Shown here: piece after piece, positions 12,438 to 36,570 of the stretch
How positions within the stretch are numbered: the first letter of the stretch is position 1
How the letters are laid out: each line of letters opens with the position of its first letter
Source: Macrostomum hystrix
Lineage: Eukaryota; Animalia; Platyhelminthes
Length of the DNA stretch: 64,000 nt
Assembly (NCBI GenBank): GCA_950097015.1
Contig: CATNEN010000001.1
Span: forward strand, 5,642,001-5,706,000
Direction of reading: 5' to 3'
Position numbers and translations under genes: made by a program
The notes under the pieces: generated by a model
The model's database searches: none
What the model was told of the DNA's origin: nothing
What the model saw: only the letters and a program-made list of their open reading frames with translations

Positions 12438-15400
12438 ATGAAAGTTTTCCTGCTACTGTGTCTGGTGCACATTGCGTTGAGTGTGGACTTCAAGCTGGCA
12501 GTTGTGGTTGAGCAGAACGCTCTGGACATTTCCCTCATCGACCTGGCTGTGAGCAGACGAGTGAATTCGAACTGGCGACTGCTGTCAGGCCACTCAATGT
12601 CACACGTGACTGTACAGGTGTCTGCTGACGGGGGTCAGCTGGCTGCGAGAGAGGGTGAGACTATTGAGACGCGTCATATATCGGCCCCAGATGGTCACAG
12701 TTGTCGATAGCATTGACCGAGCGTTTATTATCAATAGAAATGCCATTGGACATGAAATTATACAGATGCGATTCCAGCTACTTCGTAAGAAACCTTAAGT
12801 TTTATGATATTTATTCAGAATAGTGTAAAAAAATATTTCTGGCTTCGGCAACCAAAAATAATATGGAATTATCTCTACCCGATGTCATAATTATACTAAT
12901 CAATATATTCTCATCGGAAAGAGCTACTGCAAAAAAATTGTAGGGCGAGTATATTTTCCTGCAACATATACTAGTCCAGAAGCAAACTGCTTCTCCGCGG
13001 AGAGAAGGCTTGGGGGCTTGTCGTGCAATTTACGCCCTTGAGGGCCAACCTCCAAGGCACAGTGAAATGTACACTGCCTGACGATGAGAAAGTCAGGGCA
13101 GATGTACACACCTGTGTGAGCGTATGCCTGCGTACGGTATCTGTGTGCGTGTGTGCTCAGGAGTCAGCGAAATGGGCAGAATTGCCTCCTCGCTGGCTGC
13201 GGGTCTAGTATCACCAAACTATGTGTCATTGCCCGCAGCCCTCCTGCAATTATTATTATTATTATTAAGAATAACTGATTAGCGAGCAGAAGAAAAAAGT
13301 TCTTACATAAACAATTGATATTACTGCCAACTATGAATAGAATGCTCGAGGACGCGTTGATTTCGGTTAGAAACTTTTTAGTAAAATTTATAACTCGAAA
13401 TCAAAATTTATATTTCTATAACTTAAAAGCAGAGCTAACAGAGAATTGTCTGGACCAATTGTCTCCAGACAACTGTTTGTGCTGCATGCACCCGAACGGA
13501 ACAACGCAAAAAAATGAAACTCAAGAACACGGGCCAACTTTTTGTTGCGCATCTTCTGAAACAAGAATCAAGTCTCCAGTTCTTCAGACCGTCAAACCAA
13601 TATAGCGCCAGTGTATCTCATACACCCCTCTACACGAACTAGCACTGTGCCTCAGTGAGGCCTTGCCAGGCCTTCAAAACTTGTCAGCATGTCACCAGAA
13701 TGTGCCTGCATCATCTCCGACTTTGACGGTCACCTACCTTTATCTAGAGCTGCTGGACCTTCAAGTGCTACAAGATGTAGAACTCGGCGACTATGGACAC
13801 CCTGATGAGAATTTCTCCAATTTCACTGATCCAGCCTAAGTATTAGACGCAGCTCAACAACAGTACACCATCGTCAGTCACTACCCATGGCATTCAGGCG
13901 CTGCCATAATTTTCAGGGTGGGGGCTTGGTATAAAAAAGTGCGGCAAAATGGCTTGGTAGTCCTCCTTTTAACATGCACAATCAAAAAACTTTTCACTGA
14001 GGCCAGCCAAATGTGCAGCCAGTGGAGCATCGAAATGCTTCAACTGATTCTGCTACCAATTTTACTCGTACAACCGAGCAATGAAATACCCCATTGCAGT
14101 GTGCTCACGTCCGGGTCTGTCAGCCCTGCTGGTAATCGGCAGCTGCGGTCTCATCTCAGAGCTGAGCACTCTGGCCAAGTCACTGCAGCTGCCGTTCATC
14201 GGCCTGCCAAATGCTCTGTGCCGTCAAGCCGATAACAGTAAGCTGATTATCAACGCCCTGGAAACTCGATTTAGAAGTGAAATCCCAATAATAATACGAG
14301 CTCGTAGGATTATGTCACATATAGCCACTTTCATTCCTAGTTTATTGTTCTTAAAACTCTGCACACAGCTTTCCAGCTTCCAAGTTCCAAGTTCCAAGTT
14401 CCAAGCTTCTGAGTTCCCCAGCTTCCAAGTGGAGACCGCTAATGAATGCTAAGTCGTATCTTGATCAAGATTAAAAGCATGCATCTCATCGATAAAAGCT
14501 CAAATACCAACACAGTTTGATCTAAGGCACCAGCTCAGATTTATTAGCATTATATGCATGACTTACTAAAAATATTGCCAACAGTTTTCTCTTCAATCGC
14601 ACCTAAGGATATGGGGCGATCGGCACTCATTCCGCCACTGATATGCTGCACACAGCTGCGAAAACCATGGCGAAACAAGATAAAAAAATAGCAGCCATCT
14701 TATGCGACTCACTTCATGGTATGCGAAACATGAAGCGAATTGGTACTTCGCAAGACTGCAGCGAGAATCAAAAGCCTCACAAAATTCTTTTTTAGACGGT
14801 TCGCTGCTGCAAACTCTGCAGACAGAGCTTTCTAATGCAGGAATCAGCTCCATAGCACTGAACGTCGAAGCTGCCGGCCGCTTTACTCTCGACGGAGGAC
14901 TCTCAGAGCAGCTCAGGCATGTCATGAAGAAGCGAGTGTTCAACGCCGTTGTCATGGCGACTCCTCAAAACGCACTCAACATTCTGGCTGCAGCTGCGAA
15001 CGCCAGCGTCATGCAGCAGAACTACTTCTGGCTCGTGATTGACAGTGGACTGAGCAAGTCCCAGCTCATGTCAGCTTGTCCAACGAACTGCAACTTGGCT
15101 CTGCTGCGAGGAGGCACGACAGGCGTCAATGAGGCATCAGGCTGTGCGGCTGCAGTGAGAGACGTCTTCCCCAGCTGTGACACTGACGCCATTCGGGTGA
15201 GCTTTGTCACTCCCGAATCCGCTAGCTGTATCGCATGCTCTCCAGTGTGACTTGTCACATCCAGAGTGCATGCAGTGAGTCAACTCTCACCCACTCACCG
15301 ACCGCATGCTCACAGACACTGGACGTGCGTCTCGTGGATGCGATCGAGGCTCTGGCAAAGGCTCTCACGGACTCTCTCGCGCAGCCGACATTCCAAGCAG

Positions 15401-18176
15401 TGAGCAACGCATCGTGCTTTCCTCTGCAGCCATGGTCGTCTGGCACTCATGTGCTCAGCAAGCTCATCTCAGTGAGTCCCGACTGCATGGCTGACTGCAT
15501 GTGCTTGTGCGTTTCACCACTGCTCTCCTGTGCACTCTGCGCTTGCTTGATTTCAGCTGACGAACTTTGACTCGGAGCGCGGTGTGATTTCATACAACTC
15601 GACAACAGGATTCTTCAACTCTCAGGGCATCGAGATTGTCGCGTCATTCACCGAGCAGGTGGGAGCGTCGGTCCGATTCGTGCTGAGCGGTCGGTTCAGC
15701 AGCGGCTCGCTGACGAAGCTGTTCCGCAAGAAGGGAGCCGATTTCGTCTTTCCCAACACCTTCACCGGCTTCAACAATGTGTCGATTGTTGTTTGCTCGC
15801 CATTGGTACGTACAAATTAAGGCTAAAATTGATAGCTTTATCTATCTGATGTAGCACAGAGATTCAATTACCTTAAGCAAATTGTCAAATTGTACATCAT
15901 TTTAATTCAGTCCCCACCTGTAGTGGTCTATGAAAAGTTGTACGACAACGATACTGTGGCAGCTAGTGGAATGGCAATGGACGTAATGGACTATCTTGCC
16001 CAAAAGTTGGAATTTCGGTACTTAAGCCTTGAAACTGTGAAAGCGCTTACTGTATAGATGTTTCATATAATGCTAATTGAATATCCACTTTAAATGGTTT
16101 GCAGCTACAACGCAAAGCGTCCGAGGGATGGTCAGTGGGGTGCTCCAAGAAGCTCAACACCCTTCTACACCGGCTGTGTCGGTGAAGTTCAGCAAGGAGT
16201 AAGCTTTGAAGTCTTAGGCTTGTTAGTAATGTATTGTTGAAAAATTTTATCGCTTGGTTTTCATTAAGGTGACAGAATTAAATTGAATAGCGTCTTCATT
16301 TACTACTGTGAAGCAGTGTGTGCTCATTGTTCAACATAAAGATTGCAATACGTTTTTCTGGTCAACTGAAGCATCAGTTTCAGCCGACGGGCCGATTGTA
16401 CTCGTACAGCTGTGCTACAACCCTCTAACTCACTTATCCCCACAGATTGCTCAACTAGGCGCCGGGCCCTTCACAAAGACCACTATTCGTGACGCCGTTA
16501 TTGATTACACAGCCGACCTGTACCCCGAGAATAGCGGAATCCTAGTGCCCAGAGCAAGTTCTGGTACAAGCATGTGGAATGTGTTCCTGCCTCTACATTG
16601 GCACGTTTGGTTGTCTCTGGTTGCCTCCTTCTTTGCGGCCGCTTTTACTGTCTGGTTCCTGGCGTACTTTTCGCCGTTCTCAGGCATCAACCTTAACCTG
16701 GACAGCGCAATCACCGATGAGAATAGTTATCCTCAGTATATGTGGACCATTGTTGGCAGTTTTCTTCAACAGGGACAGGACTTCTATCCGTGCGCAATGT
16801 CACCAAGAACAACACTTGCCTTCTGGTGGTTTTTCAACGTTATAATCTATTCTGCTTACACAGGTAGCAAGCTTACAGTATCATGGTATTCCCGTATTGA
16901 AAACTACACAGCAATTCACTATGACATTTTTATGAACCAACTTTAACAAATGAATCCTCACAGCGTTTCTCACTTCAACACTGACTGTATCGGTAACCAG
17001 TTTGCCAATTAAGACTCTGCAAGATTTGGTCAATCAGAAGGACATTAAACCCGCCGTATCTAACGGCAGCAGTGTGTACACTCTGCTCCGTGCTGCGCAA
17101 TCTGGAGTGTATCAAGAACTGGCCAATGCGTTAGTTTCAGTTCCTAGCTGCTCTGTGGAGGTAAGATTTTGCATTTAGGAGAGCGCGCATGCTAACAAGC
17201 AATACGTGGGACCACTCCCAAATCTCGTATTCATGTTCATCGAATGATGCTTAGATCAAAAGTTCTCAAAACGTCTGGCTAGTTCTTAGGGATCACATGC
17301 GATCAAACGACAAAGGAGTATTGGATGAATTGTTCAAAATGTACGCTATTAATTGGAATCGTTTTAGTAGGGCCGGGGAATTGGAATTCTCAGAATCTGT
17401 GGCAGCACAAATTTAAGAAGCAAAAGCTTATAGAATTGTCAGTCAAAGTGCGCTCGTTAGCTTTACGATCTAAAATGATCCTTCATACTATAGTTTTTAA
17501 CATTTGAGCAAGTTTTTAACATACTATGTTAAAAACATTTATTGATTCGTATCACAATCGTCAGCCATCGATAAATGACAACTTAAGATGTTGAATAATT
17601 ATAACTATACCTTCCTTTCATTCGGCACAAAAGATGCAAGTCAATAACAAGATCGCCTGCTTGGGTGACCTGTCCCTGATAGCCTATATGGCCCAGCTAA
17701 ACTGCAGTCGATGGTACGTTGCAGAAGAAGTTTTCAATTCAGCCACTGTGGCCTTCATAATGCCAGAGGACGCTGTGTATGGACCAGCTGTTAGTTACTA
17801 GTGAGTCACAATCTGAAAAAATATTCTTAGCAAGGCCATTTTTAAATGACGTAATTGAGGACGACGCTTGTGAAAGTTTTATTGCTTGTCTTTAGGATCT
17901 TCTTCCATAATATTTTTGTGTCTGGATTTCCACCAACATTTTAATAACAATTGCAGCATGCAAAAGCTTCACGAAAGCGGGCAAATGCAACTACTGAAAC
18001 ACAAGTACTTTGTTCCGGAAACTGAAAATCAGTGCGTCAAGACCTCTAACGCCGACGCTGCCTCCGCAGACCCGATCGGCATTGGCACCGTGCTGGGCAC
18101 TTTTGTCGTCACCGGCAGCTTCTATGCTCTAGGTCTCATTTTGCTGGTTGGCGAGCTCGTCATTGCAAAGTTGTAG
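12438..18176 (+). CDS. iGluR/IR-like receptor, copy A, intact, 12 exons, 824 aa
   Basis: Exons 12438-12654, 14100-14237, 14608-14718, 14796-15196, 15316-15471, 15557-15805, 15911-16017, 16105-16198, 16446-16863, 16964-17160, 17634-17800, 17957-18176, all in phase. Signal peptide, ATD, S1 (DGQWG, GCVGEV, GPFTKTTIR, IDYT), M1, pore SFLQQG, M3 SAYTAFLTS, PIKTLQDL, KLHESG, M4. Confidence 0.93.
12990..13266 (+). mobile_element. SINE family 2, 5'-truncated, in intron 1 of iGluR A
   Basis: Aligns with 5620-5985(-). Ends in (TTA)n. Confidence 0.8.
13638..13972 (+). mobile_element. Partial copy of the MITE at 45855-46258
   Basis: Colinear similarity (ggccttgccaggccttcaaa...gaatttctccaatttcac...ttggtagtcct). 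Confidence 0.8.
14829..15779 (+). repeat. Homogenised ATD cassette, copy A (exons 4-6 with two introns)
   Basis: Almost identical to 22210-23161(-), 28443-29378(-) and partly 31846-32381(+). Confidence 0.95.
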
Positions 18177-20231: not shown

Positions 20232-23200
20232 TAACAATCCATCAGCTCGCCAAAGAATGCGTCCTCTGGATACATGAAGGCTACGGTAGCGGCGTTAAAT
20301 TTTTCGTCTGCAGTATAGACCTTGGAACAATTCTGCTTCGCCAAGTACCTCGAGGAGGTCAAATCTCCGAGACAAGAGATGTTGCTGCTCAGCGACTAAA
20401 TATAGTAATATACTTTTACAGAGTTAGAAAAAATCTAAAAAATGTAACCGCTTCTAAGAGTGTACGTGTGGTATGGCATCAGAAGGCGTAAGGCGTGCTT
20501 ACCTTCAACGGGCAGTTCACTTCAGGAACCATAATGTCTGCAATCTGCTTGTAAATTCCTGAAGGAGTGTTTTTCAGCAGCCTGTCTAAATTAGTTCCGC
20601 GAATGTAGCCCGGAATAATTTCTGACTGAGAAGCCAAATCCTGGAGGGTCTTGATGGGCAAATCAGTTGTCCTAACCGTCAGAAAGGACGCAAGAAATGC
20701 TGAAAAAATGATAACTCAACTCGAGATTAGAAGGTATATAAATTGCGCGACATTTCTTAAGCCTATTTCAACAAACCTGTGTAAGCCGCGTACACAACAA
20801 CGTTAAAAAACCACCAAAACGCGAGCGAGGTTCTCGGCGACGGTGCGTAGGGATAAAAGTCCTGGCCCTGCTGAAGGAAGCTGCCAATGATAGTCCACAT
20901 GTACTCCAGGTAGCTGGCCTCGTCATCAATGGCGCCCTCGAGACCCAGGTTGATGGCTGAGAACGGTGAGAAGTAGGCCAGTAGCCACATGAGAGAGCAG
21001 CCAAGAAGAAGGAGGCCACAAGGCAGGCTCACACATGCCAGTGCAGCGGTAGGAACACGTTCCACATCTTAGTGGCCAGTTGGGGTCTGGGAACCAGGAT
21101 ACCGTTGTACTCCGCCGAGAAGTCAATGACTTCGTCTCGAACTGATGTCTTAGTATATGTCCCGGCTGCAAAGTCAGCAACCTGGAGTTTGAAATTTGGT
21201 AAACAGAAAGAATTTTTGCAATTTTTTAATACACAGAGCTAGTAAGTGCTAATAGGAGGCCAAATCGATTACATGATTTAACGAATCGTTACGAATAAGT
21301 AAAAGTATTTGATTGCAGCCTTCGCAAACTTTGTAAGTGAGTTGGGTAAAGTGGTTTAACCCCACCCGGCTCTGTCCATTTAGCTGCTCACCTGCTCTGC
21401 TCTCTGCGCGCGCTTGATAATTTTTTTTTGTTGTGATTGAATAAAAAACCTATGTTCTCACTTGCTTTTAATCTTCATTGTCGCTTCGGCATCTATTTAA
21501 GCACTGCATTTTATAGAAAAAAGCTATCGTTATCCAAATTTACATGCCATTGTGAGGGGATCACCTTTCCTTTCTCGCTCGCACCTTCACTGCCTCTTCC
21601 ACCTTCAATCTGCTACCTTTGCTTTGCATCTGTGTGGGGCTGTTAGATAATGGACAAAAAAAATCTGAAGAAACTGCGCATCATGCACTTAAGTACTCAA
21701 GAAAGATTGGAACGTTGGGCAAGCAACATTCTGCAGGCTATTCACAGTGGTAGAAAAAGTAAGGAAACGTATTAAATTCTAGATTCTGACCCCACGTTGA
21801 AGCTCTCCAACGCAGCCAGTGAAGATCTTAGTTCCAGCCTTAGATCGACCCCATTCTCCGTCGTCAGGAGCTTTTAGAATGTAGCTAAAATAATAAGCAG
21901 GTAAGTGCATTCGTATTCAGCTCGAACAATTTTTATGGCTTATATCTAACATCCCCACAAAATGTAATCTTAGTGTTAAAAAATAACATTAAAAAACACT
22001 AACCGAAAATTAAGTCTCGAAGCAAGAAACTGCAGTACATCAGGAGCAATAGCATAGCCGATGTAAGCATTACGAGCGTATTTGCCAAGTATTCAATTAC
22101 GCCCGACGATGGATAGTCCTGAAAATGCGTTTAAATCCAGAACACGAAAAAGAAATTTCGTCAACCAGAAAATGAGCTCGTACTATTGGGCAACAAACAA
22201 CCAAAGTAGCATTGTTGAAGCCGGTGAAGGTGTTGGGAAAGACGAAATCGGCTCGCTTCTTGCGGAACAGCTTCGTCAGCGAGCCGCTGCTGAACCGACC
22301 GCTCAGCACGAATCGGACCGACGCTCCCACCTGCTCGGTGAATGACGCGACAATCTCGATGCCCTGAGAGTTGAAGAATCCTGTTGTCGAGTTGTATGAA
22401 ATCACACAGCGCTCCGAGTCAAAGTTCGTCAGCTGAAATCAAGCAAGCGCAGAGTGCACAGGAGAGCAGTGGTGAAACGCACAAGCACATGCAGTCAGCC
22501 ATGCAGTCGGGACTCACTGAGATGAGCTTGCTGAGCACATGAGTGCCAGACGACCATGGCTGCAGAGGAAAGCACGATGCGTTGCTCACTGCTTGGAATG
22601 TCGGCTGCGTGAGAGAGTCCGTGAGAGCCTTTGCCAGAGCCTCGATCGCATCCACGAGACGCACGTCCAGTGTCTGTGAGCATGCGGTCGGTGAGTGGGT
22701 TGAGAGTTGACTCACTGCATGCACTCTGGATGTGACAAGTCACACTGGAGAGTATGCGATACAGCTAGCGGATTCGGGAGTGACAAAGCTCACCCGAATG
22801 GCGTCAGTGTCACAGCTGGGGAAGACGTCTCTCACTGCAGCCGCACAGCCTGATGCCTCATTGACGCCTGTCGTGCCTCCTCGCAGCAGAGCCAAGTTGC
22901 AGTTCGTTGGACAAGCTGACATGAGCTGGGACTTGCTCAGTCCACTGTCAATCACGAGCCAGAAGTAGTTCTGCTGCATGACGCTGGCGTTCGCAGCTGC
23001 AGCCAGAATGTTGAGTGCGTTTTGAGGAGTCGCCATGACAATGGCATTGAACACTTGCTTCTTCATGACGTGCCTGAGCTGCTCTGAGAGTCCTCCGTCG
23101 AGAGTTAAGCGACCGGCAGCTTCGACGTTCAGTGCTATGGAGCTGATTCCCGCATTAGAAAACTTGCTTTGCATAATCTGTGGAATGGATCCTCCTGCAG

Positions 23201-24599
23201 TGTTGTCGGATCGTGGAAGCTCATAAGCTAGTTTGTTTGTTTGCTTGAAGATTTTTTATATCTGGAATTATTACCGTTGGCTTCGTCATACAGAATGACA
23301 ATCTTCAAAGCTTGTTTTGACTGAAAGGCTGCAACGGCCGCGTCGAAAATTTGTTCGGCCGCGTGGCTTCCAACGACACCGTAGGCTGTGGGATGTTTTA
23401 CAAACATCCACAAGTAATATGGTACGAGTATGTCGCAGGTCGGTATTGAATTAGCTGGTTTAATGTCAATGCTTTCGTAAAACAAGGTCAAATGAGGAAT
23501 ATTCATTTAAGACAATAGAATTTCCTGACGAATTTACTTCACCTCACTTATCTCAATTATTAGCAAGTGCGAGTACCTATGCAGTGTTTTAGCGGACTAT
23601 TGAGCCCCAATTCTCGTAAAAAAGGCTGCTGTCAGTACTTACTATTGTTTCGTTTGAAGAAAAACAAAAAGGTGCTCTTCGCCGAACCCTGATTTCGTGA
23701 ACTCTAATTAACAAGTATTAAGTATAGCGAGTTACTAATACACATTGTACCCAAAAGACTAACGCCTGAGTATAATCTTACTGCCAGCAACCGTTGAAAT
23801 ACGCATTAGTTCAAGCAAGAAAAGCATTAGATTAACTTAGTATACTAATTGACGTCTAAACTGCATTTGGCAGTGAGACTATGCCCTAAGGTACAGCGTG
23901 TATGTGCATGGCTTGAAATGTGCATAGGCCAAACAAAAAGTAAGTTATTAACGAGCTGCATAGAGCATCATAATTTTGAGTTGCATAAAATTCTGAACCA
24001 TGCTGAAATGGTTCAGCTCAACGCGTTCTTTGTCTGCCCACTCTAAAGATGCTGAGAAGAAATGTCAGGGTGATTGTCCATTCAGACGTTAAAAACTCAC
24101 AATAAAAATACTGTCGAGATATTTCTATGATTCTTAAAGAAGTTATATTTCACGACTTCTAAATACACCTTAGCTGTGTACTAATCCATTTATCAAGCAA
24201 ACAATTTACCAACTGGGTTTCCGCTGCACAGAGCTGTTGGCAGGCCAATGTACGGCAGCTGCACCGACTTGGCTAGGGAGCTCAGCTCTGAGACGCACCG
24301 CGATGAAAAGCGCATCGCAAACCCTGAGAGCAAGTTGAGACCATCCAAAATCACTCACACTCCTTCGCAGCCAGCTGAGCCCCTTCAGCAGACACCTGCA
24401 CAGTCTTGTGTGACATTGAGTGGCCTGACATCAATCGCCAGTTCGAATTCACTCGTCTACTCACAGCCAGGTCGATGAGGGAAATGTCCAGAGCGTTCTG
24501 CTCAACCACAACTGCCAGCTTGAAGTCCAGAGTCAGTGCGATGGGCAATAGACACAAAAATATCGATATTTCTTCGAAGAAAATCAAAATGTTTTTCAT
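20232..24599 (-). pseudogene. iGluR/IR-like copy B, pseudogene
   Basis: Exons 1-11 recognisable. Exon 7 is 115 nt vs 107 in A and C (frameshift). In-frame TGA at 21029-21031 (HWHV*), a 4-codon deletion in S1 (FSAEYNG vs FSADLFAEYNG), a frameshift in M1. No M4 exon found downstream. Confidence 0.88.
22210..23161 (-). repeat. Homogenised ATD cassette, copy B
   Basis: Inverted near-identical copy of 14829-15779. Identity with copy C extends to ~23404. Confidence 0.95.
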
Positions 24600-25751: not shown

Positions 25752-28700
25752 TCACTCCATCGGAGTCGAACCAACTCGTCCGAGCAGACACCAGCCCCGA
25801 GTTTTAAGCCAAGTGACGGCCATCTCAACAGCCAGTAGGAGCAAGCCCAGACAGAACAAGCCGCCAGTAACAATGAAGGCGCCAGCCACCGTGTCCATAC
25901 CAATTGCCTCAGCCCCAGTGTAGCTGCTGCCTTCGCTGCCGCACTGCACATCGGTTTCTGGTTCATAGTACTTGTCGATGAGCAGCTGCATTTGGCCGCT
26001 TTCTCGGAACTTGGTTAGACTGCGGGTTGGATTCAGACATTTTGAAAGCCGCCAGAAAAATTTTTGGTAATCAAGGAAGAATATAGATCGCTTCACGCAC
26101 AAAAAATTCAACTGGCGAAAAGAGAATTGAGTACAAGGTAATATATCTATCAAAGAAGTTCGATCCCTCTCCTAAAAACCAGAAAGTTTTTTGCTGCGTC
26201 GAAACGTAGCCACGCAACACCGGATATCAACGGGCAACGAAGTATTCGAAGTACATTTAGTGTGCTGGTGCCACCCGTTGAAATATCCGAAGCTTAACCG
26301 ACTATAAAAGCCCGTCAACATCGAAAACTGCTATCACTGTCACATGCTCGATAAAAGATGATGAATTTTAAAGTTAAAGCAAAGAAAAGAAACAGGTGAA
26401 CTGAATGCATTTGTGCTTAAATGGATTACGTGCACCTTTGTCAGAATCGCTGTGTATTACGATGCTCCTGAGAGGTAGTGGCTTGATTTTATTTCATAAT
26501 GTGTGTAACCAAAAGTGCTAGATGTGGTAATTTTAGGCAGAAAATTTCGTGCAAAATTATGGGTAAGTTGCAGGATATTACAAGCTGTGTTGAAACACTA
26601 AGTATCCTTGGCTACAGGAAGAACTCAGTATCTAATCATGGCGCCGCTTACTAGAAGTCGATAGCCTCAGCGTAGATGGCATCCTCCGGGTAGATCAGGG
26701 CCACGGTGGCAGCGTTGAACAGATCGCTCGCCACGTAGGCTTTGTCGCAGTTCAGTCGAGCGACATAGCGAAGACGCGAAACATCACCAAGGCAGGCAGT
26801 GTCACTGCTTTGTATGGCCTGAAGAATATGAGAATTTGTACGACCCATTGCTTAAACTTTTCGATTGTAAGAGCAACTTTTTTATATTTAAGAGGGCTCA
26901 GAACATAAGCCCTTCGGAACTATCAAGACATTTTTAGAAGTTCCATATTGCTGAATGTCTATATTTTCATCACTTTGGCATGATCCATACCATACCTGGA
27001 AGGGACAATTGGGAGCATCCACAAGCAGCTTTCCTATCTGACCGTAGATGCCGGTTCTCGAAGACTTCAACAGCTGGTACAGGTTGGTACCCGGAATGGA
27101 GCCGGGTCTTATCGCAGTCTGAGTGGTGAAATCTTCAAGCGATTTAATTGGCATCTGGGTCACCGACACCGTTAACATTGACGTCAGGAAGGCTGTTGTG
27201 GAGCAGATAATGTTATTCACTTAACGACATTTTCACAATACTAAAGATCCCATCTAGAACCACCAAACAATTTAGATAAAATATTTGTCTAATCATAAAC
27301 CGAATCTGAGTTAGAAAATTCACAGGTTCAGGTCTGGCATATTTCTGAGCAGTCTAGGTAAATGAGCGTGTCTAAATCTAAAAAGACACTCATACAGTTA
27401 CCCAGTCTAGTAATGAATGAACTAAACATAAACTATTTCCTTCATCTCACCTGTATACGCCGAGTAAACAATAACCTGAAAGAAGAACCAAAAGACCAAT
27501 GAAATCCTGGGCGAATTCGCAAACGGATAGAAGTCTTGGCCTTGCTGCAAGAAGCAACCAGTGACTGTCCATAGATACTCAAGGTAGTTCGCCTCGTCAT
27601 TGATGGCGAACTCCAACTGCAGATTAATGGCTGAGAACGGTGAGTAGTAGGCCAGAATCCACACACAGAACGCAGCAACGAAAAGGGACAAAGCAAGACA
27701 AAGCCAGAGCTGCCATGTCAGAGGATAAAAGATGTTCCACATCTTGGAATGCGGTACGGGACGAGGAACTAAGATTCCGTTGTACTCCGCGAAAAGGTCG
27801 GCAGAGAAGTCGATGACGGCATCGCGAACTGTGGTCTTTGTAAATGCACCAGCGCCAAATTGGGCATTCTTAAATGACAGGTCAATCAGGGCTATGCAAA
27901 GTTAATCAAATCGTTCCGCATATCAAAGAAAGACAAAGAAAAAGCTGATTTTACTCCTCGCTGCATTTCCCCGACGCAGCCGCTGAAAATTGATGAGTTG
28001 GCAACTGGACCACCCCACTGTCCGTCTGAAGGCCGCTGCAGTATGTACCTAAAATAAGTAAGGTTTAGTGCCTATTTGTTTACGAAAATACAATCAACAA
28101 ACGGTTCTACACAACTAAACTTGTATAGACATGTTCTATTCAAGTTCTATTCATAGTAAAAAACAAAAGAATCAAAAAAAAACTGGAAACGCACTGAAAA
28201 TTAAGCTTTTGCGACAGATACTCGACAAGTTCAGGGTAAAATCCTGTGCCAATGAAAACATTATTTCCGAGGTTGGTGACAACGACAGCATGGGGATGAC
28301 CCTGAAAGTAAAAGGTTAAACACATCCACAAAAGTTAAATGTTATATTAAAAATGTGAGTCGAGTGTTTAAAAGTTCGATTTGAATTAAAAAAACATGCC
28401 GTAGGCGTGCAAGCCACAATAGAATCGTTGTTGAAGTCTGTAAAGGTGTTGGGAAAGACGAAATCGGCTCCCTTCTTGCGGAACAGCTTCGTCAGCGAGC
28501 CGCTGCTGAACCGACCGCTCAGCACGAATCGGACCGACGCTCCCACCTGCTCGGTGAATGACGCGACAATCTCGATGCCCTGAGAGTTGAAGAATCCTGT
28601 TGTCGAGTTGTATGAAATCACACCGCGCTCCGAGTCAAAGTTCGTCAGCTGAAATCAAGCAAGCGCAGAGTGCACAGGAGAGCAGTGGTGAAACGCACAA

Positions 28701-30629
28701 GCACATGCAGTCAGCCATGCAGTCGGGACTCACTGAGATGAGCTTGCTGAACACATGAGTGCCAGACGACCATGGCTGCAGAGGAAAGCACGATGCGTTG
28801 CTCACTGCTTGGAATGTCGGCTGCGTGAGTGAGTCCGTGAGAGCCTTTGCCAGAGCCTCGATCGCATCCACGAGACGCACGTCCAGTGTCTGTGAGCATG
28901 CGGTCGGTGAGTGGGTGAGAGTTGACTCACTGCATGCACTCTGGATGTGACTTAAGTCATACTGGAGAGCATGCGATACAGCTAGCGGATTCGGGAGTGA
29001 CAAAGCTCACCCGAATGGCGTCAGTGTCACAGCTGGGGAAGACGTCTCTCACTGCAGCCGCACAGCCTGATGCCTCATTGACGCCTGTCGTGCCTCCTCG
29101 CAGCAGAGCCAAGTTGCAGTTCGTTGGACAAGCTGACATGAGCTGGGACTTGCTCAGTCCACTGTCAATCACGAGCCAGAAGTAGTTCTGCTGCATGACG
29201 CTGGCGTTCGCAGCTGCAGCCAGAATGTTGAGCGCGTTTTGAGGAGTCGCCATGACAACAGCGTTGAACACTTGCTTCTTCATGATGTGCCTGAGCTGCT
29301 CTGAGAGTCCTCCGTCGAGAGTAAAGCGACCGGCAGCTTCGACGTTCAGTGCTATGGAGCTGATTCCCGCATTAGAAAACTTGCTTTGCATAATCTGTGG
29401 AATGGATCCTCCTGCAGTGTTGACGGATCGTGGAAGCTCATAAGCTAGTTTGTTTGTTTGCGTGAAGATTTTTTATAGCTGGAACTATTACCGTTGGCTT
29501 CGTCATACAGAATGACTATCTTCAAAGCCTGTTTTGACTGAAAGGCTGCAACAGCCGCGTCGAAAATTTGTTCGGCCGCGTGGCTTCCAACGACACCGTA
29601 GGCTGTGGGATGTTTTACAAACATAACTTAAGTAATATGCTACGAGTATTGAAAATCTATAGACATTGAAATCGAATGTTGATACTTAATAGCATAGGCT
29701 TCATAAGGTGTACTTTTGTATTTATAGTGTGCATTGTGCATAATCTTTACGGCTGCAAAACACTGATACAGCGCTGGTAATCTTTCGTCGTTGATAAGCT
29801 AAATATTATCTGTGATTGTAATAATCGTGTGATTATTCGCTCTTAGGCGCATGTGCTATCTACGAGTTAAAAAAAAATAAATGCATCTTTCCAAAACTAT
29901 TGGCTTTAAAAGCAGAACAGAATGCAGTGTATATACCATGCGAGCATTTTGTTTCTTACATGTTGGTCTTTGGCTGCACAGAGCTGTTGGCAGGCCGATG
30001 AACGGCAGCTGTAGCGACTTGGCCAGAGAGCTCAGCTCTGAGACGAGACCGCAGCTGCCGACTGCCAGCAGAGCTGACAGACCCGGGTGTGAGCACACTG
30101 CAATGGCAGGTGAAATTTAAGTACAGTTGTGCATTGCTCCTTACTGTAAATTATTATAGGGCATATCTTAAGAAATATTCGTTGAAGAAGAAGAAGAAGA
30201 ATTCTTAAGAAGAATTGGGCACTATTTTGCTCATGACAGAGCAAATCGTATACGGAGGTTTATTAAATCCATCATAAGCTTATTGTAACTAGTTTCTTTA
30301 ACGTCACGGAGCTTTTCTCTGCTGGAATCAAAATGGTTATCAGTGACGTTTTTTCGTCTAAATTTATATTCCTCATCGCCTCTTGAGTTGCTTTACAGCT
30401 CACCATCCCTAGCAGCCAGTTGAGCCCCGTCCGCAGACACCTGCACAGTCACGTGCGACATTGAGTGGCCTGGCAGCAGTCGCCAGTTCGAATTCACTCG
30501 TCTGCTCACGGTCAAGTCGATGAGGGAGATGTCTAATACATTCTGCTCAACCGCAGCTGCTATTTTGAAGTCAAAGCAGGAAGCGACTGACGCTGCAATG
30601 TGCAGCAGCGTTGCTGCTAGCAAAAGCAT
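25752..30629 (-). CDS. iGluR/IR-like receptor, copy C, apparently intact, 12 exons, 843 aa
   Basis: Exons 30629-30404, 30097-29960, 29602-29492, 29411-29011, 28889-28734, 28648-28400, 28301-28195, 28048-27955, 27868-27451, 27192-26996, 26818-26652, 26019-25752. All internal exon sizes equal those of copy A. Intron 6 needs a GC donor. Confidence 0.9.
28443..29378 (-). repeat. Homogenised ATD cassette, copy C
   Basis: Near-identical to copies A and B, including introns. Confidence 0.95.
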
Positions 30630-31269: not shown

Positions 31270-34200
31270 GGCAGTGTGCTCCAGTCCGGGTCTGTCAGCC
31301 CTGCTGGCAGTTGGCAGCTGCGGTCTCTTCTGAGAGCTGAGCACTCTGGCAAGTCGCTGCAGCTGCCGTTCATCGGCCTGCCAACAGCTCTGTGCAGCAG
31401 AAAACCAATACGTAGGCAAAAAGCTTTCATAGAATTGATTAAAAATGCCCATTTACGCATTATCTTATCTTATCGATATTGTAAAGACAGCAAGATCGTC
31501 TTTCGTCTTGAAACTCGCAAATCAATGCTAGTGTCGTTGAGGCTGCGACTTAACAAAAAGTAAAAAATTGTGAGCTTCAGAAAAATGCTTATCTTTAGTC
31601 TCGAGATCGATACCGTATTTTGTTTTTAGCCAGCCATGGAAATTTAATAATACTGTTTCATTAATAGACGCTGCTGTAGCGGCATTTCGATCCAGATGGA
31701 CCACTGGAGTTGCTATCAATCCAATGGTACAAACACGCAGTTTCTTGTGAAAAATGCTTATCATTTCATCTACATAAAACTCCAGAACTTCCACGATACG
31801 ACAACACTGCAGGAGGATCCATTCCACAGATTATGCAAAGCAAGTTTTCTAATGCGGGAATCAGCTCCATATAGCACAGAACGTCGAAGCTGCTCGCCGC
31901 TTTACTCTCGACCGAGGATTCTCAGAGCAGCTCCTCAAAACTCTCCTCAAAACGCACTCAACATTCTGGCTGCAGCTGCGAACGCCAGCGTCATGCAGCA
32001 GAACTACTTCTGGCTCGTGATTGACAGTGGACTGAGCAAGTCCCAGCTCATGTCAGCTTGTCCAACGAACTGCAACTTGGCTCTGCTGCGAGGAGGCACG
32101 ACAGGCGTCAATGAGGCATCAGGCTGTCCGGCTGCAGTGAGAGACGTCTTCCCCAGCTGTGACACTGACGCCATTCGGGTGAGCTTTGTCACTCCCGAAT
32201 CCGCTAGCTGTATCGCATACTCTCCAGTGTGACTTGTCACATCCAGAGTGCATGCAGTGAGTCAACTCTCACCCACTCACCGACCGCATGCTCACAGACA
32301 CTGGACGTGCGTCTCGTGGATGCGATCGAGGCTCTGGCAAAGGCTCTCACGGACTCACTCACGCAGCCGACATTCCAAGCAATGTTAACGGCGTCGGTGA
32401 CCCAGATGCCAATCAAATCGCTTGAAAATTTCACTATTCAGACTGCGATAAGACCCGGCTCCATTCCGGGTACCAACCTGTACCAGCTGTTGAAGTCTTC
32501 GAGAACTGGCATCTACGGTCAGATAGGAAAGCTGCTTGTGGATGCTCCCAATGTCCCTTCCAGGTATGGTATGGATGATTATTTAACCGTAGAAAGACCA
32601 TATGGTATTTTAAATTCCTAACATTGTTCTTTTTTTATCTCCTAAAAGTTTTTGTCAGAAGCCATCATAATCTAGAACACGGGCTTGAGTTTTCGGCTCT
32701 ATCCTATTAAGCACTTTCAGTAACTCAAATCATCGGCATCGTTGAGATTGCCTATCATTTTTGTCGGATGTCTGGTGGCAAAAACACCAATATAGCCATA
32801 TTTTTTGTTACTATGTCGGCTATTATTTTTAGTTATATCCATATTTTTTTTTGTTGACCGATGGACTGACCAATATGGATTCACCATATTCAATTTACGG
32901 AGCAACGTTATCTGTCCTTGTCGCCAGGGTCTTCGTTAATAATTGTTGAATATCTCGAAGAAGATCTGACGGCCTTGAAAGCTAGATCGTGGTCAAGGGT
33001 TGGATAACTTTGATCCATATTGTGGACTTTCTCAAAAATCGGTCTCACGGTTTGTGTGATTTTGTGAAGTAGGCAGTCGGTATTCGATATCCCAATATCC
33101 CAATATTCAGATAAGTGGTCTTTATATAGGTGGGGGAATAGTGATCTTTTTACTGTTAGGTGAAGGTGAATGTGAATGTAAAACTTCCACCCCATACCTG
33201 TTGAGTTTTTTAAGTTTATTTTTTAGGCCAATTCATACACATTTTTTATTAGGAATTGCAGACTATTTTTATGAGTTTCAATGAGTTACAATTGAAAATA
33301 TTTGTGTTAGGCCCTACAAAGCAGTGACACTGCCTGCCTTGGTGATGCTTCGCGACTTCGCTATGTCGCCCGACTAAACTGGCAAGTGATCTGTTTAACG
33401 CTGTCACCGTGGTCTACCCAGAGGATCCAATTTGCGCCGAGGCTATCGACTTCTAGTAAGTAGCACTATGTTATCATCCGCTCTGACCAATTTTTTTATA
33501 AAATTTTCCTAATAAAATTAGTAAAAATATTTTTTTGTTGTCAAAATTGCTGCACGCAGCTTTACAAAGTATAAGTGCCTCCACACCACTCTAGAATATG
33601 TCGTATGGCAGCATTACATTTATGCGTCAATCACAGGGTCAGCCAGGTGAGCTTCGCAAACATTGTCAAACAGAAACAAATATTACCTGTCTACTCAAAC
33701 CTGGTGCCATAATGCACGTTCGTATGCCGCTTAAGATTACGAGCCACATAGTGATTCGCTTTTAGCTTCATACCATGCCGAGTTTGACATGTGTTTCTCA
33801 CGAATGAAGTCGAACGGATCGTGCGACAGCGTACGTTAAGACGTGCTTCACAGTCAACCGCCATCATAAGTTTATGAGGCGAAAGAAACCTAACCTTGAC
33901 ACTATATTCTAATTTTTTTTCGCCCCTTATGCACAATATTCTTTTTTCTGTTTCAGATTACCGCTCAAAATAAAAAAGCAATTTGCATTTTCGAGTCTTT
34001 ACAGTCCATGAGAAAAAAGTATTTAAACTTCTGAAATGTCTAATATGATATCCAACCCGCAGTCTAACCAAGTTCCGAGAAAGCGGCCAAATGCAGCTGC
34101 TCATCGACAAGTACTATGAACCAGAAACCGATGTGCAGTGCGGCAGCGAAGGCAGCAGCTACAGTGGGGCTGAGGCAATTGGTATGGACACGGTGGCTGG

Positions 34201-34333
34201 CGCCTTCATTGTTACTGGGGGCTTGTTCTGTCTGGGCTTGCTCCTACTGGCTGTTGAGATGGCCGTCACTTGGCTTAAAACTCGGGGCTGGTGTCTGCTC
34301 GGACGAGTTGGCTCGACTCCGATGGACTCATAG
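31270..34333 (+). pseudogene. iGluR/IR-like copy D, internally deleted pseudogene closest to copy C
   Basis: Frameshifted exon 2, damaged exon 4, exon 5 fused to exon 10 at ~32381 (QPTFQA|MLTASVTQMPIK), deletions in exon 11 (33311-33456). Exon 12 (34062-34333) nearly identical to copy C. Confidence 0.9.
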
Positions 34334-34873: not shown

Positions 34874-36137
34874 GTGCAAGTAGCGATCATCTGCTTCTCA
34901 TGGTTGTATTCTACGCAATGGGGCTGCTTACTCCCAGTTGCAGAACCAAACTTGGGGTGACCTTTTGCCACTCGATGGAATCTGGGATTCACTGGTCAAG
35001 GCCGGACACGACCCTAGGAGGATCAAGCAGTTTGATGATTACTTAAAAAGAGGGCAGCAAACGGGCATCCATGATGGTGCATTCATGATAATGCCAAATT
35101 CTCGCTTGTGGCGCTTCACCTCACTTCTTCAAAAGAGCACGTTGGCCCACGGCAATGCCATCTTGACATACTTCACTTAGCTGCTGCGGGCATCCTTCGG
35201 AGGCAGCGGGGAGGCGTTGCCGCCCATTCCGCAACTAAAGCTGCGGTGTCGCGCAGGGGTTGCTTAGGAGTCACTGGCAATCGCAGGATTGTCTCTCACT
35301 GGCTTCTGATCTATTGTTACCAAATGAGTTGTCAGTGCCCACCAGCCCACCTGCAAATATCCTCGTTATTATTAATTTTTTTGAGAATTCAGTAAATGTA
35401 GGGGAGTCTCTAGAACGGTGGTTAGAGCTCAATGGGAAAACTCGCTTTGACCTAAACACTTTGTCCTCGAGGGTGACAAAGCTGGGTTAAAAATAAGTGC
35501 AGGTGTGTCGTGTCGGCCTCTACAGTCTATGGACTGAGCAGCTGTACGCATCCTTTAGAGCGGCCTTTGAATAGCTGCGCCTTACTTCGCTTTACATCAG
35601 GCCCAAAACTTTTTATTAACAGTACAAAGACTACGCTATTTTTCTGTACAAGCCTTTATGGCAAATACATATAGGTTAAAAGATGAAAAAAAAATAATTA
35701 GTCAATCATATATATTAAAAAATGATAGCCGTCATGATTAAATCATGAAATTTAGTCATGTTGGTGGTTTTTGCCACCAGACACCCCGACGTTTTGTCCA
35801 GTCTGTCCAGAATCACAAATCATAAAGTTGTTGTATCAGATAGAAGGGAAAAGTTAAGCCCTTGTTCTGGATTTTCATGGCAATTGGTTGAATGTTTTGG
35901 TAGATACAGAAAAAAATATGTGAGTATTCAAAGAACTACTATTTAAGATTGTCAATTGTCTATTGTATTTAAGCCATTCAGATATGCGGCTGCAAATTGT
36001 CAAAGCAGTCTTCAACACCACCCAATCTATTTATAGGAACAGAAACGACATTGCCGAGACCTTAATTGCGATCCCCTTTTGGAATATTGGAAGATTTAGA
36101 AGTGCACTGCAGCCATTTATCAAGCAAACAATTTACC

Positions 36138-36570
36138 AAATGTGTTAGCGCTGCACAGAGCAGTTGGTAGGCCGATGTACGGAAGCTGCAGCGACTTAGC
36201 CAGAGAGCTCAGCTCTGAGACGAGACCGCAGCTGCCGACTGCCAGCACGGCTGACCCGGGTGGGAGCACACTGCAATTGGCAATTTTCTCGCTGTCAGAA
36301 AGTACAGGCAGTTGCAGCCATCTCAGGTCACTCACCTTCCTTAGCAGCCAGCTGAGCCCCGTCCGCGGACCCTGCACAGTCATGTGCGACATCGAGTGGC
36401 CTGAAAGCAGCCGCCAGTTAGAATTCACTCGTCTTCTCACAGCCAGGTCGATGATTAAAATGTCCAGAGCGTTCTGCTCAACCACAACTGCCAGTTTGAA
36501 GTCGACACCCATTGCGATGGACAGAAGACACAAAAATACTGATATTGCTTAAAAAACATCGCCATACCAA
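36138..36570 (-). pseudogene. iGluR/IR-like copy E, 5' fragment (exons 1-2) with frameshifts
   Basis: VDFKLAVVVEQNALDI...RRVNSNWRLLSGHSMSH and GSCGLVSELSSLAKSLQLPYIGLPTALC. Intron-2 start ggtaaattgtttgcttgataaatgg identical to copy B. No further exons found. Confidence 0.85.

What the first reader, a model, noticed from the sequence alone, without database searches (positions are those of the whole stretch)
12438..36570. Constant-ATD / variable-LBD mosaic array of five iGluR/IR-like genes
Seen: copies A-D share a ~0.95 kb near-identical cassette (partial in D) that includes two introns. Exons 1-2 are also very similar among copies. Exon 3 of A versus B/C, and exons 7-12 among A, B and C, are strongly diverged with unalignable introns. 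The cassette ends at the ATD/S1 boundary (FPNTFTGFNN). Known: iGluR ATDs direct subunit assembly and S1S2 binds ligand. Inference: domain-restricted gene conversion keeps one assembly interface while ligand pockets diversify, giving a combinatorial and possibly chemosensory receptor repertoire.
Basis: partly seen in the sequence, partly recalled or inferred. Interest (0 to 1): 0.9.

Follow-up and report, generated by a model that had tools for sequence, protein, structure and literature searches.

The report
Glutamate-receptor genes sharing copy-pasted front domain
Neighbouring flatworm glutamate-receptor channel genes keep an almost identical front (amino-terminal) domain, introns included, because that block is repeatedly copied between them, while their ligand-binding and pore halves are old and very different; the process is well known, but I found no report of it for this channel family.

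Summary
Copies A, B and C share a 947-bp core (exons 4-6 plus two introns) with only 11-15 mismatches. Copy D carries part of it. Identity collapses within about 30 nt on both sides, inside exon 4 and 28 nt before the end of exon 6 (after FPNTFTGFNN). Synonymous difference is 0.05-0.09 in the block and 0.6-0.85 (saturated) in exons 7-12.

It is not an assembly artefact. Read depth fits 4 and 3 copies. An RNA contig from another sample joins the block to A's own ligand-binding exons.

Only A (824 aa) and C (843 aa, odd GC splice donor) are intact. B, D and E are decayed copies.

The same mosaic recurs in three other loci of this genome: nine genes at two sites on contig C3 and three genes on C34. 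The 3' breakpoint falls at the same codon in all of them. For C3, the trees of the two gene halves disagree (AU p = 0.005).

Best reading: recurrent non-allelic gene conversion confined to the amino-terminal-domain block, as in fish protocadherin clusters. The idea of a shared assembly interface with diversifying ligand pockets is untested. Pseudogene carriers and conserved ligand-contact residues weaken it somewhat.

The scan had already noted this pattern on other DNA of this genome.

The parts
12438..18176 (+). Gene A: intact 12-exon iGluR gene (824 aa). Exons 12438-12654, 14100-14237, 14608-14718, 14796-15196, 15316-15471, 15557-15805, 15911-16017, 16105-16198, 16446-16863, 16964-17160, 17634-17800, 17957-18176.
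   Evidence: Models built from three-frame reading and GT-AG sites. The junctions 15196/15316, 15471/15557 and 17160/17634, the start of exon 9 (16446) and the end of exon 11 (17800) match a spliced RNA contig of run X2; the same contig runs unspliced through intron 9 (16446-17158 in one piece). Pfam Lig_chan 1.1e-14 on exon 9. Exon 9 aligns to GluA2 residues 468-607.
14831..15777 (+). Cassette core in A. It covers most of exon 4, intron 4, exon 5, intron 5 and exon 6 up to the codons for FPNTFTGFNN.
   Evidence: 11-15 mismatches in 947 bp among A, B and C, with sharp flanks. Unitig depth of run X1 is 324 and 238 over the cassette against about 76-87 in single-copy flanks, which fits 4 and 3 copies.
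12991..13975 (.). Very high-copy repeat inside intron 1 of A. It accounts for the length of that intron (1445 nt).
   Evidence: Summed contig depth is 10^5-10^6 there in all four runs, with many partial contigs and loose ends. Parts match 5615-5891 and 45901-46260 of the window.
20237..24599 (-). Copy B: degenerate paralog. Its exons 3-6 are open (exon 3 by eye, not checked for stops) and exon 8 is also open; exons 10 and 11 align along their length but were not checked for stops.
- Intron 1 is nearly deleted, and exon 2 is 24 nt short.
- Exon 7 is 8 nt too long and has an in-frame TGA.
- Exon 9 is 13 nt short, with a TGA at 21031-21029 and a 1-nt frameshift.
- No convincing exon 12 (M4).
   Evidence: Three-frame reading. 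tblastn of A and C models. A relaxed search of 18177-20240 for exon 12 gave only chance-level hits.
22212..23159 (-). Cassette core in B.
25752..30629 (-). Gene C: open 12-exon model (843 aa). Exons 30629-30404, 30097-29960, 29602-29492, 29411-29011, 28889-28734, 28648-28400, 28301-28195, 28048-27955, 27868-27451, 27192-26996, 26818-26652, 26019-25752. Exons 2-11 have the same lengths as in A. The intron 6 donor is GC (GCATGT) instead of GT.
   Evidence: Pfam Lig_chan 8.9e-15 on exon 9.
28428..29376 (-). Cassette core in C. The B-C tract extends upstream to 29649 through intron 3, exon 3 and part of intron 2.
31271..34327 (+). Copy D: pseudogene, a partial inverted copy related to C.
- It has exon 2, an exon 3-like piece and exon 4 (37-39 nt deletion).
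- Exon 5 runs to about 32381 and is then fused directly to a C-like exon 10 (32379-32579, 96% to C 27180-26980).
- Exon 11 is at 33311-33453 and has a frameshift.
- Exon 12 is at 34050-34327 (98.9% to C 26032-25756).
- It lacks exon 1 and exons 6-9.
36113..36550 (-). Copy E: a 5' fragment holding exons 1-2 only.
   Evidence: blastn 75-90% to exons 1-2 of A, B and C. tblastn of A residues 7-123 only.

Best explanation
**What it is.** The window holds a small cluster of AMPA/kainate-like ionotropic glutamate receptor paralogs. The genome is flatworm-like: its nearest database proteins are from Macrostomum lignano.

**Old halves.** The ligand-binding and pore halves (exons 7-12) are ancient paralogs. 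Their synonymous sites are saturated and their introns do not align.

**Recently copied block.** The segment that encodes the amino-terminal domain has been overwritten between copies by non-allelic (interlocus) gene conversion.
- The latest tracts cover about 0.95 kb in A/B/C/D and 1.24 kb between B and C. They left 1.2-1.6% divergence.
- Their ends lie inside exon 4 and inside exon 6, not at splice sites.
- Exons 1-2 carry an older tract, with 13-21% difference.

**Recurrent and family-wide.** Nine genes in two arrays on contig C3 and three genes on C34 show the same design. Each gene has its own 5' flank and its own LBD-TMD half, and the nine C3 genes also have their own signal peptides (the three C34 genes share theirs). 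The mature ATD block, introns included, is 95-99% identical within a cluster and about 50% identical in protein between clusters.

**Shown:** the identity pattern, the breakpoints, the copy number, expression and splicing of A, and the tree conflict in C3.

**Inferred:** conversion as the molecular mechanism. Also inferred is what holds the boundary in place: either loss of homology beyond it, or selection against importing a foreign first strand of S1, or both.
For: - **Neutral sites are homogenised.** Introns 4 and 5 and synonymous sites are as identical as replacement sites: 0-2 mismatches in 204 intron nt. pS is 0.05-0.09 in exons 4-6 and 0.6-0.85 in exons 7-12.
- **Sharp breakpoints inside exons**.
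- **Run test.** The longest identical run is 281 nt, against at most 48 in 10,000 permutations.
- **The ATD is not intrinsically slow.** Between clusters it is 48-54% identical in protein, like the LBD/TMD at 36-65%.
- **C3 cluster.** ATD pS has a median of 0.052 over 36 pairs, while LBD/TMD pS is 0.74-0.79. The ATD tree puts the nine genes in one clade (100/99). The LBD+TMD tree does not, and holding them together is rejected (AU p = 0.005).
- **Branch lengths in the window.** The A-C path is 0.059 in the ATD tree and 1.67 in the LBD+TMD tree.
- **Same 3' breakpoint.** It falls at the same codon, within about 3 codons, in all three clusters. In C3 the 5' breakpoint lies at the signal-peptide/mature-ATD junction.
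- **GC content.** Cassette introns are GC-rich (0.53-0.61 against 0.24-0.46 for other short introns) in the window and in C3. This is expected from long-term GC-biased conversion.
- **Not an artefact.** Depth fits 4 and 3 copies. An RNA contig from another sample links the cassette to A-specific exons. The copies differ at 11-15 sites.
- **A known process.** Regional conversion of exactly this kind is documented in fish protocadherin clusters (PMC1852091).
Against: - In the window itself the ATD and LBD+TMD trees have the same topology, (A,(B,C)). The conflict there is only in branch length and dS.
- Intron GC is not raised in the C34 cluster. GC3 of ATD exons is not higher than in non-clustered relatives.
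- No long reads were available to span each cassette with its unique flanks.
- No sister-species comparison was possible, so ongoing concerted evolution is inferred from one genome.
- The one tandem pair available from M. lignano (the two halves of P0151) is 47% identical throughout. It shows no homogenised front half.
Confidence: 0.85

Rival explanations
1. Adaptive constant/variable design. Selection favours one identical ATD per cluster, so that subunits with different LBDs can co-assemble. Selection against converted LBDs then fixes the tract boundary at the domain border. The result is a combinatorial, possibly chemosensory repertoire. This builds on conversion rather than replacing it.
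For: - The homogenised unit matches a protein domain rather than exon structure. It runs from the signal-peptide junction to the ATD/S1 linker and ends about 25 nt inside exon 6, at the same codon in three clusters.
- Each gene keeps its own 5' flank.
- ATDs differ by about 50% between clusters. This would separate assembly groups.
- All 12 genes of the C3 and C34 clusters show no stops in their matched exons.
- From established knowledge: iGluR ATDs contribute to subfamily-specific assembly.
Against: - In this window two of the four carriers (B, D) are pseudogenes, so conversion acts without regard to function.
- A boundary can maintain itself simply because homology ends there. Its shared position could be inherited from one ancestral array.
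- Exon 3 escapes homogenisation in A and in two C3 genes.
- The S1 Arg is conserved. The candidate S2 acidic residue was read by eye only. Divergence is even across LBD and TMD, with no focus on the pocket.
- No co-expression, assembly or ligand data exist.
Confidence: 0.3
2. Young whole-gene duplicates whose LBD/TMD halves diverged extremely fast, while the ATD stayed as it was.
For: Within the window the two trees have the same topology.
Against: - Introns of the 3' halves do not align, and synonymous sites there are saturated. Introns and synonymous sites of the cassette are about 99% identical in the same genes. Neutral sites cannot differ this much under a single age.
- LBD divergence within C3 equals that between clusters. 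The C3 genes are not monophyletic for the LBD.
Confidence: 0.02
3. Assembly collapse or polishing artefact that made the cassette copies look alike.
For: Near-identical 1-kb repeats are a classic place for polishing errors. No long reads could be laid.
Against: - Short-read unitig depth is about 4x and 3x single-copy depth over the two parts of the cassette. This matches the copy numbers in the assembly.
- A spliced RNA contig from a different sample joins the cassette exons to A-specific exons 9-11.
- The copies retain 11-15 private differences.
- The same pattern occurs at three other loci with 12 more genes.
Confidence: 0.02
4. The inverted cassettes of A (+) and B/C (-) act as a recombination switch. 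It would invert the intervening DNA and swap ligand-binding halves between promoters. This idea comes from another first-stage note, s1-847287.
For: A and B carry 986-bp inverted repeats of 97.6% identity, 6.4 kb apart. In principle these are a substrate for inversion by homologous recombination.
Against: - No read or contig shows the inverted junction. The only RNA contig that spans the junction has the reference arrangement.
- B is a pseudogene, so a swap would give a dead product.
- No recombinase gene or site was seen.
- In other clusters the same cassettes sit in direct orientation.
Confidence: 0.03

Closest known systems
Regional gene conversion in clustered protocadherin genes of teleosts (fugu Pcdh2; zebrafish and human clusters). 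Source: PMC1852091, which cites Noonan et al. 2004.
   Same: - Tandem neuronal-receptor paralogs in which one part of the coding sequence is more than 95-99% identical at the nucleotide level, synonymous sites included. The other part stays diverged.
- Homogenisation is specific to each subcluster. Converted blocks differ strongly between subclusters.
- A raised-GC signature is used there as evidence.
   Different: - Here the family is an ion channel (iGluR). The converted block holds introns. Each gene is a complete multi-exon unit rather than a variable first exon spliced to shared constant exons.
- The converted part is the N-terminal domain.
- The GC signal is seen in introns of two of the three clusters only.
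AMPA/kainate-type ionotropic glutamate receptors (GluA1-4, GluK2)
   Same: - Exon 9 aligns to GluA2 468-607. This covers the S1 Arg that binds the ligand carboxylate, M1, the pore loop with QQG, and M3.
- There is an N-terminal ATD-like region of about 420 aa, an S2 segment and an M4.
   Different: - Only about 30% identity to solved receptors.
- The gate motif reads AYTAFLTST instead of SYTANLAAF.
- The tail after M4 is very short (A ends 'IAKL').
- The subfamily is lineage-specific and expanded. The closest database proteins are uncharacterised Macrostomum lignano sequences at 33-65% identity.
Insect-type chemosensory ionotropic receptors (IRs)
   Different: From established knowledge, odour-tuning IRs mostly lack the ATD and have lost the glutamate-contacting residues. 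These genes keep an ATD and the S1 Arg. By eye they also keep a candidate S2 acidic residue. No expression data place them in sensory cells.

Membership tests
Ionotropic glutamate receptor (iGluR) superfamily | Pore module M1, re-entrant M2 loop and M3 (Pfam Lig_chan) | tested here: met
   Lig_chan E = 1.1e-14 (54.9 bits, cut-off 30.8) on exon 9 of A, and 8.9e-15 on exon 9 of C. Exon 9 aligns to GluA2 468-607, including QQG and the start of M3.
Ionotropic glutamate receptor (iGluR) superfamily | Bilobed S1/S2 ligand-binding domain with the conserved Arg that binds the ligand carboxylate | tested here: met
   The S1 motif PFTKTTIRDAVIDY aligns to GluA2 PLTITLVREEVIDF. The Arg is present in A, B and C. 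Pfam Lig_chan-Glu_bd on the single exon 7 scores only E = 0.012, below its cut-off. S2 alone gave no PDB match. Its CLGD motif was read by eye.
Ionotropic glutamate receptor (iGluR) superfamily | Amino-terminal domain of the LIVBP/ANF_receptor fold ahead of S1 | tested here: inconclusive
   Exon 4 of A and of C gives ANF_receptor E = 8.7e-4 and 2.3e-3, below the cut-off. A profile of ten exon-4 peptides finds only the GABA-B2 Venus flytrap domain at E = 0.86. The M. lignano relative P0151 is 43% identical to A over residues 7-293 and passes ANF_receptor at 2.6e-12. The joined ATD was not folded or searched.
Ionotropic glutamate receptor (iGluR) superfamily | Fourth membrane segment (M4) after S2 | tested here: met
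   Exon 12 of A and C encodes a hydrophobic stretch (A: GTVLGTFVVTGSFYALGLILLVGELVIA), read directly. It is absent from B.
Insect-type chemosensory IRs | Loss of the ATD and of glutamate-contacting residues in tuning receptors | tested here: not met
   An ATD-like region of about 420 aa is present, and the S1 Arg is retained.
Concerted evolution by regional gene conversion | Near-identity at synonymous and intronic sites in one segment, with old divergence in the adjoining segment of the same genes | tested here: met
   0-2 mismatches in 204 intron nt. pS is 0.05-0.09 in the block and 0.6-0.85 beyond it.
Concerted evolution by regional gene conversion | Abrupt tract boundaries, and runs of identity longer than chance allows | tested here: met
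   a 281-nt identical run against at most 48 in 10,000 permutations.
Concerted evolution by regional gene conversion | Different phylogenies for the converted and unconverted parts | tested here: met
   In the C3 cluster the ATD clade has 100/99 support, and monophyly of the same genes for LBD+TMD is rejected (AU p = 0.005). In the window cluster the topology is the same and only branch lengths differ, 28-fold.
Concerted evolution by regional gene conversion | Raised GC in the converted tract (GC-biased conversion) | tested here: inconclusive
   Cassette introns have GC 0.53-0.61 against 0.24-0.46 in the window and in C3, but not in C34. GC3 of ATD exons exceeds that of LBD exons in clustered genes, but not that of singleton relatives.
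Concerted evolution by regional gene conversion | Paralogs group by species for the converted part and by ortholog for the rest | not testable with these tools
   No genome of a close relative was reachable. Run X4, labelled as another organism, holds a spliced contig with cassette exons 2.6% off A, but it could not be retrieved.

The most novel reading that the evidence does not exclude
The clusters form a built-in constant/variable receptor system. One homogenised ATD per cluster acts as an assembly tag. Any subunits of that cluster, each with its own promoter and its own ligand-binding and pore module, could then form heteromers, while subunits of other clusters are kept out. Selection at the ATD/S1 junction keeps conversion from erasing ligand specificity. 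This would be a way of making combinatorial ion-channel diversity not described before.
Probability: 0.2. Interest if true: 0.8.

Novelty: new member of a known kind. Interest (0 to 1): 0.55.

Why it matters
Regional gene conversion is a textbook process. Here, however, its tract coincides with a protein-domain border in at least 14 apparently intact channel genes at four loci. It stops at the same codon in each cluster.

This gives a natural experiment on what the iGluR amino-terminal domain does. Within a cluster, subunits share one ATD but differ by about 40% in everything else. Between clusters, the ATDs differ by about 50%.

If the ATD sets assembly partners, these clusters define assembly groups. 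That can be tested directly by co-expression and domain swaps.

There is also a practical warning. Phylogenies and orthology calls for this family are misleading unless the ATD block is left out. Short-read assemblies will tend to collapse these blocks.

Tried and rejected
- **PDB searches.** S2 exon 11 alone gave nothing meaningful. A profile of ten exon-4 peptides gave only a GABA-B2 Venus flytrap match at E = 0.86.
- **Literature.** Searches for gene conversion combined with iGluR, ATD or ionotropic receptors gave no report of this pattern. This covers the open-access library only, so absence is weak evidence.
- **M. lignano tandem pair.** The two halves of fused model P0151 are 47% identical throughout, with no homogenised front half. 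That gene model is messy, so this is not a clean test.
- **More arrays.** I tried to fetch further arrays (C15, C24, C7) to see how far the pattern extends.
- **Exon 12 of B.** A relaxed tblastn search found only chance-level hits.
- **GC3 test.** Used as in the protocadherin paper, it is ambiguous. ATD GC3 exceeds LBD GC3 in clustered genes, but singleton relatives have equally high GC3 in both halves.
- **Joined models.** I joined exons only inside local scripts, reading window coordinates, for translation, local alignment, dS and trees. Those were run exon by exon, by reference. There is therefore no full-length homology search and no ATD fold or dimer model.
Full report
**1. What is in the window**

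Self-comparison of the window shows five related units between 12.4 and 36.6 kb. They are A on the + strand, B and C on the - strand, D on +, and E on -.

Stop-free stretches carry Pfam Lig_chan (E = 1.1e-14). They also give weak hits to ANF_receptor and Lig_chan-Glu_bd.

The window is C1:5642001-5706000 of a 220-Mb assembly in 42 contigs. The nearest database proteins are uncharacterised Macrostomum lignano sequences. They are about 50% identical over exon 9 and 33-65% over longer matches.

**2. Gene models**

I read exon borders from three-frame translations and splice sites.

- **Gene A** has 12 exons with GT-AG introns and an open frame of 824 aa.
- **Gene C** has 12 exons and 843 aa. Exons 2-11 have the same lengths as in A. 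The donor of intron 6 is GC (GCATGT) instead of GT.
- **Copy B** is degenerate.
  - Intron 1 is almost deleted, and exon 2 lacks 24 nt.
  - Exon 7 is 8 nt too long and carries an in-frame TGA.
  - Exon 9 is 13 nt short, with a TGA and a 1-nt frameshift in M1.
  - No exon 12 (M4) can be found.
- **Copy D** is a partial inverted copy related to C. Exon 5 is fused directly to a C-like exon 10. There is a 37-39 nt deletion in exon 4 and a frameshift in exon 11.
- **Copy E** holds only exons 1-2.

So the 'five genes' are two intact genes and three wrecks.

**3. The observation**

- In the core (A 14831-15777, 947 bp), A-B differ at 11 sites, A-C at 14 and B-C at 15.
- Intron 4 has 1-2 mismatches, and intron 5 has none.
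- Identity collapses within a few bases on each side. There are 16 mismatches in the first 35 nt of exon 4 (A against B/C/D). There are 10-14 in the last 28 nt of exon 6, directly after the codons for FPNTFTGFNN. Both ends are thus inside exons, not at splice sites.
- B and C share a longer tract of 1241 bp that also covers exon 3 and intron 3.
- Exons 1-2 are 84-92% identical.
- Exon 3 of A is only 27-38% identical in protein to that of B/C.
- Downstream, exon 9 aligns as DNA (66-71%), as does a 67-nt piece of exon 12 between A and C/D (75%).
- The longest identical run in the A-C coding alignment is 281 nt, against at most 48 in 10,000 permutations.
- The cassette occurs nowhere else in the genome.

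**4. Not an artefact**

I laid four public runs on 12400-18300.

- In run X1 (DNA unitigs) the single-copy flanks have depth of about 76-87. The unitig over 14961-15399 has depth 324, and the one over 15370-15762 has 238. These are about four and three copies, as in the assembly (A, B, C, D, then A, B, C).
- Run X2 comes from another sample. It holds a 1942-nt spliced contig that joins 14814-15195, 15315-15471 and 15557-15804 to 16446-17158 and 17632-17800. So the cassette is physically linked to A's own LBD/TMD exons in RNA. Gene A is expressed and spliced.
- That contig retains intron 9, with a 4-nt indel.
- These are contigs, not long reads, so a direct long-read check is still missing.

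**5. Age of the two halves**

I computed Nei-Gojobori proportions on exon-wise codon alignments.

| Region | Pair(s) | Synonymous difference (pS) |
|---|---|---|
| Exons 4-6 | A, B, C | 0.05-0.09 |
| Exons 1-2 | A, B, C | 0.22-0.37 |
| Exons 7-12 | A-C | 0.6-0.85 (saturated) |

Neutral sites in the same genes therefore have very different ages. Purifying selection on the ATD cannot explain this, because the introns are equally identical. Rapid divergence of the LBD cannot explain it either.

**6. The pattern is family-wide**

Searching the genome with exon 4 and exon 9 peptides showed arrays in which exon 4 scores are nearly equal while exon 9 scores vary. I fetched three arrays and compared them.

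- **C3 arrays.** Six genes lie at C3:5.827-5.869 Mb and three at C3:6.26-6.28 Mb, in both orientations.
  - They share a block of about 1.65 kb, from just after the signal peptide to the end of the ATD, at 95.4-98.9% DNA identity.
  - Median pS is 0.052 in exons 4-6 over 36 pairs.
  - Their exons 7-12 have pS 0.74-0.79 and 56-64% protein identity.
- **C34 array.** The three genes at C34:2.36-2.38 Mb share 1.73 kb at 97.5-98.8%.
  - Exons 1-2 are identical, and pS is 0.005-0.016 in exons 4-6.
  - Exons 7-11 are older, with pS 0.10-0.87.
  - Exon 12 is also homogenised.
- **Between clusters.** The ATD is 48-54% identical in protein. It is no more conserved than the LBD/TMD (36-65%). The ATD is therefore not an intrinsically slow domain.
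- **Intactness.** No stops occur in any matched exon of these 12 genes.

**7. Trees**

With five non-clustered relatives added, I built two trees.

- The ATD tree puts the nine C3 genes in one clade (100/99) with terminal branches of 0-0.03.
- In the LBD+TMD tree they are not one clade. A singleton from contig C38 sits among them.
- The AU test rejects holding the nine together (lnL difference 29.1, p = 0.005).
- In the window cluster the topology is the same in both trees, (A,(B,C)). But the A-C path is 0.059 for the ATD and 1.67 for the LBD+TMD.
It is not met.

**8. Breakpoints and domain borders**

I aligned the twelve C3 and C34 genes around the end of exon 6.

- In C3, identity stops right after the codons for FPNTFMGFKN.
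- In C34, it stops three codons after FPNTFIGFKN.
- This is the same place as FPNTFTGFNN in the window, about 25 nt upstream of the exon 6 donor.
- The next eight codons differ between genes. By comparison with GluA2 they begin the first strand of S1 (my reading, from established knowledge).
- At the 5' side in C3, identity begins where the signal peptide ends. The signal peptides and upstream DNA do not align at all.
- In the window, similarity begins 19-48 nt after the ATG.

The homogenised unit is therefore the mature ATD, not a set of exons.

There is an exception. A divergent island around exon 3 occurs in A and in two C3 genes.

**9. Mechanism**

The simplest account is recurrent non-allelic gene conversion. 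A break in the block is repaired from a paralog, and the tract can extend only as far as homology lasts.

- Repeated events keep the block homogeneous and leave the rest untouched.
- Cassette introns are GC-rich (0.53-0.61, against 0.24-0.46 for other short introns) in the window and in C3. This fits long-term GC-biased conversion. C34 does not show it, and the GC3 test is ambiguous.
- Conversion is recent on a population scale. Paralog divergence in the block is 1.2-1.6%. That is only about twice the roughly 0.7% difference between the X2 transcript and the reference A. At 15379 the X2 allele of A carries the state of B/C/D.
- Two of the carriers (B, D) are pseudogenes. So the process is mechanical and does not depend on the recipient being functional.

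I cannot decide what holds the boundary at the domain border. It could be a self-maintaining homology limit inherited from one ancestral array. It could be selection against importing a foreign start of S1.

**10. Function**

Exon 9 aligns to GluA2 468-607. The S1 Arg, the QQG pore loop and the start of M3 are conserved, and the best solved relatives are AMPA and kainate receptors. The gate motif reads AYTAFLTST across exons 9-10 (read directly).

The Arg, and by eye the CLGD motif of S2, are kept in A, B and C. An amino-acid-like ligand is therefore plausible, and an insect-IR-like loss of the pocket is not seen.

The ATD assignment rests on several lines:
- its position in the protein;
- sub-threshold ANF_receptor hits on exon 4;
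- a weak GABA-B2 Venus flytrap match;
- a significant ANF_receptor hit (2.6e-12) in the M. lignano relative P0151, which is 43% identical to A over residues 7-293.

Co-assembly through the shared ATD and a chemosensory role remain hypotheses.

**11. Comparison with what is known**

The closest described phenomenon is regional gene conversion in teleost protocadherin clusters. There, one part of the variable exons is over 99% identical among paralogs of a subcluster, and the other part is diverged (PMC1852091).

I found no report of this for iGluRs in the searchable library.

Other notes of this scan describe the same pattern on other DNA of this genome: s1-355510, s1-840550 and s1-344295. My analyses of C34 and C3 agree with them.

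**12. Limits**

- Joined exon models were used only in local scripts. No joined protein was folded or searched.
- Exon segments for the other clusters are tblastn matches, not full gene models.
- pS above about 0.7 is saturated.
- More arrays could not be fetched.

**13. Verdict**

- The conversion reading is strongly supported and holds across the family.
- The functional reading is open.
- It is a new example, in a new protein family, of a known evolutionary process, with unusually domain-precise boundaries.

Noticed in passing
window 28395-28400 (- strand): The intron 6 donor of gene C is GC (GCATGT), where A and B have GT. It may be a rare GC-AG intron or a splicing defect in an otherwise open gene.
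   Followed up: partly
window 16864-16963: The RNA contig of run X2 runs unspliced through the 100-nt intron 9 of gene A and lacks 4 nt at 16935. The other introns of the same contig are removed.
   Followed up: partly
window 14608-14718; also loci L024 and L025/L026 (genes c3a_1, c3a_3): The segment around exon 3 (intron 2 to intron 3) is a divergent island inside the otherwise homogenised ATD block. This is so in gene A and in two of the nine C3 genes, so the block is converted as two separate tracts there.
   Followed up: partly
window 37272-38882 (+): A long stop-free stretch of 537 codons. It encodes a flavin-dependent oxidoreductase or monooxygenase (Pfam Pyr_redox_3, 1.5e-39), apparently without introns, just downstream of the receptor cluster.
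   Followed up: partly
window 11150-11842: An array of about 40 copies of a 16-bp unit with strong C-over-G skew, immediately upstream of gene A.
   Followed up: no
window 41240-43522 and 59240-62347: Two long minisatellite arrays (2.3 and 3.1 kb) of short units with very strong G-over-C skew (up to 0.49).
   Followed up: no
window 12991-13975: A repeat inside intron 1 of gene A with summed contig depth of 10^5-10^6 in all four runs laid, so it is among the most abundant sequences of this genome. Related pieces lie at 5615-5891 and 45901-46260.
   Followed up: no
window 7421-7668, 34593-34873, 55345-55519, 63351-63494: A short dispersed repeat (about 150-280 bp, 68-87% identical) present four times in the window. 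One copy lies between D and E.
   Followed up: no
L021-L023 (C34:2358001-2386000): In the C34 three-gene array the last exon (M4) is also homogenised (95-97% identical, pS 0.02-0.08), while exons 7-11 between it and the ATD block are older. An extra copy of exons 1-2 lies about 2 kb upstream of the first gene.
   Followed up: partly
run X4 (labelled as a different organism, same study as X1), laid on window 14829-15801: A spliced 1210-nt contig carries the three cassette exons at 2.6% difference from A, with flanks unlike A. It is either a transcript of a B/C-type copy or the ortholog in a sibling species. The contig could not be retrieved.
   Followed up: no
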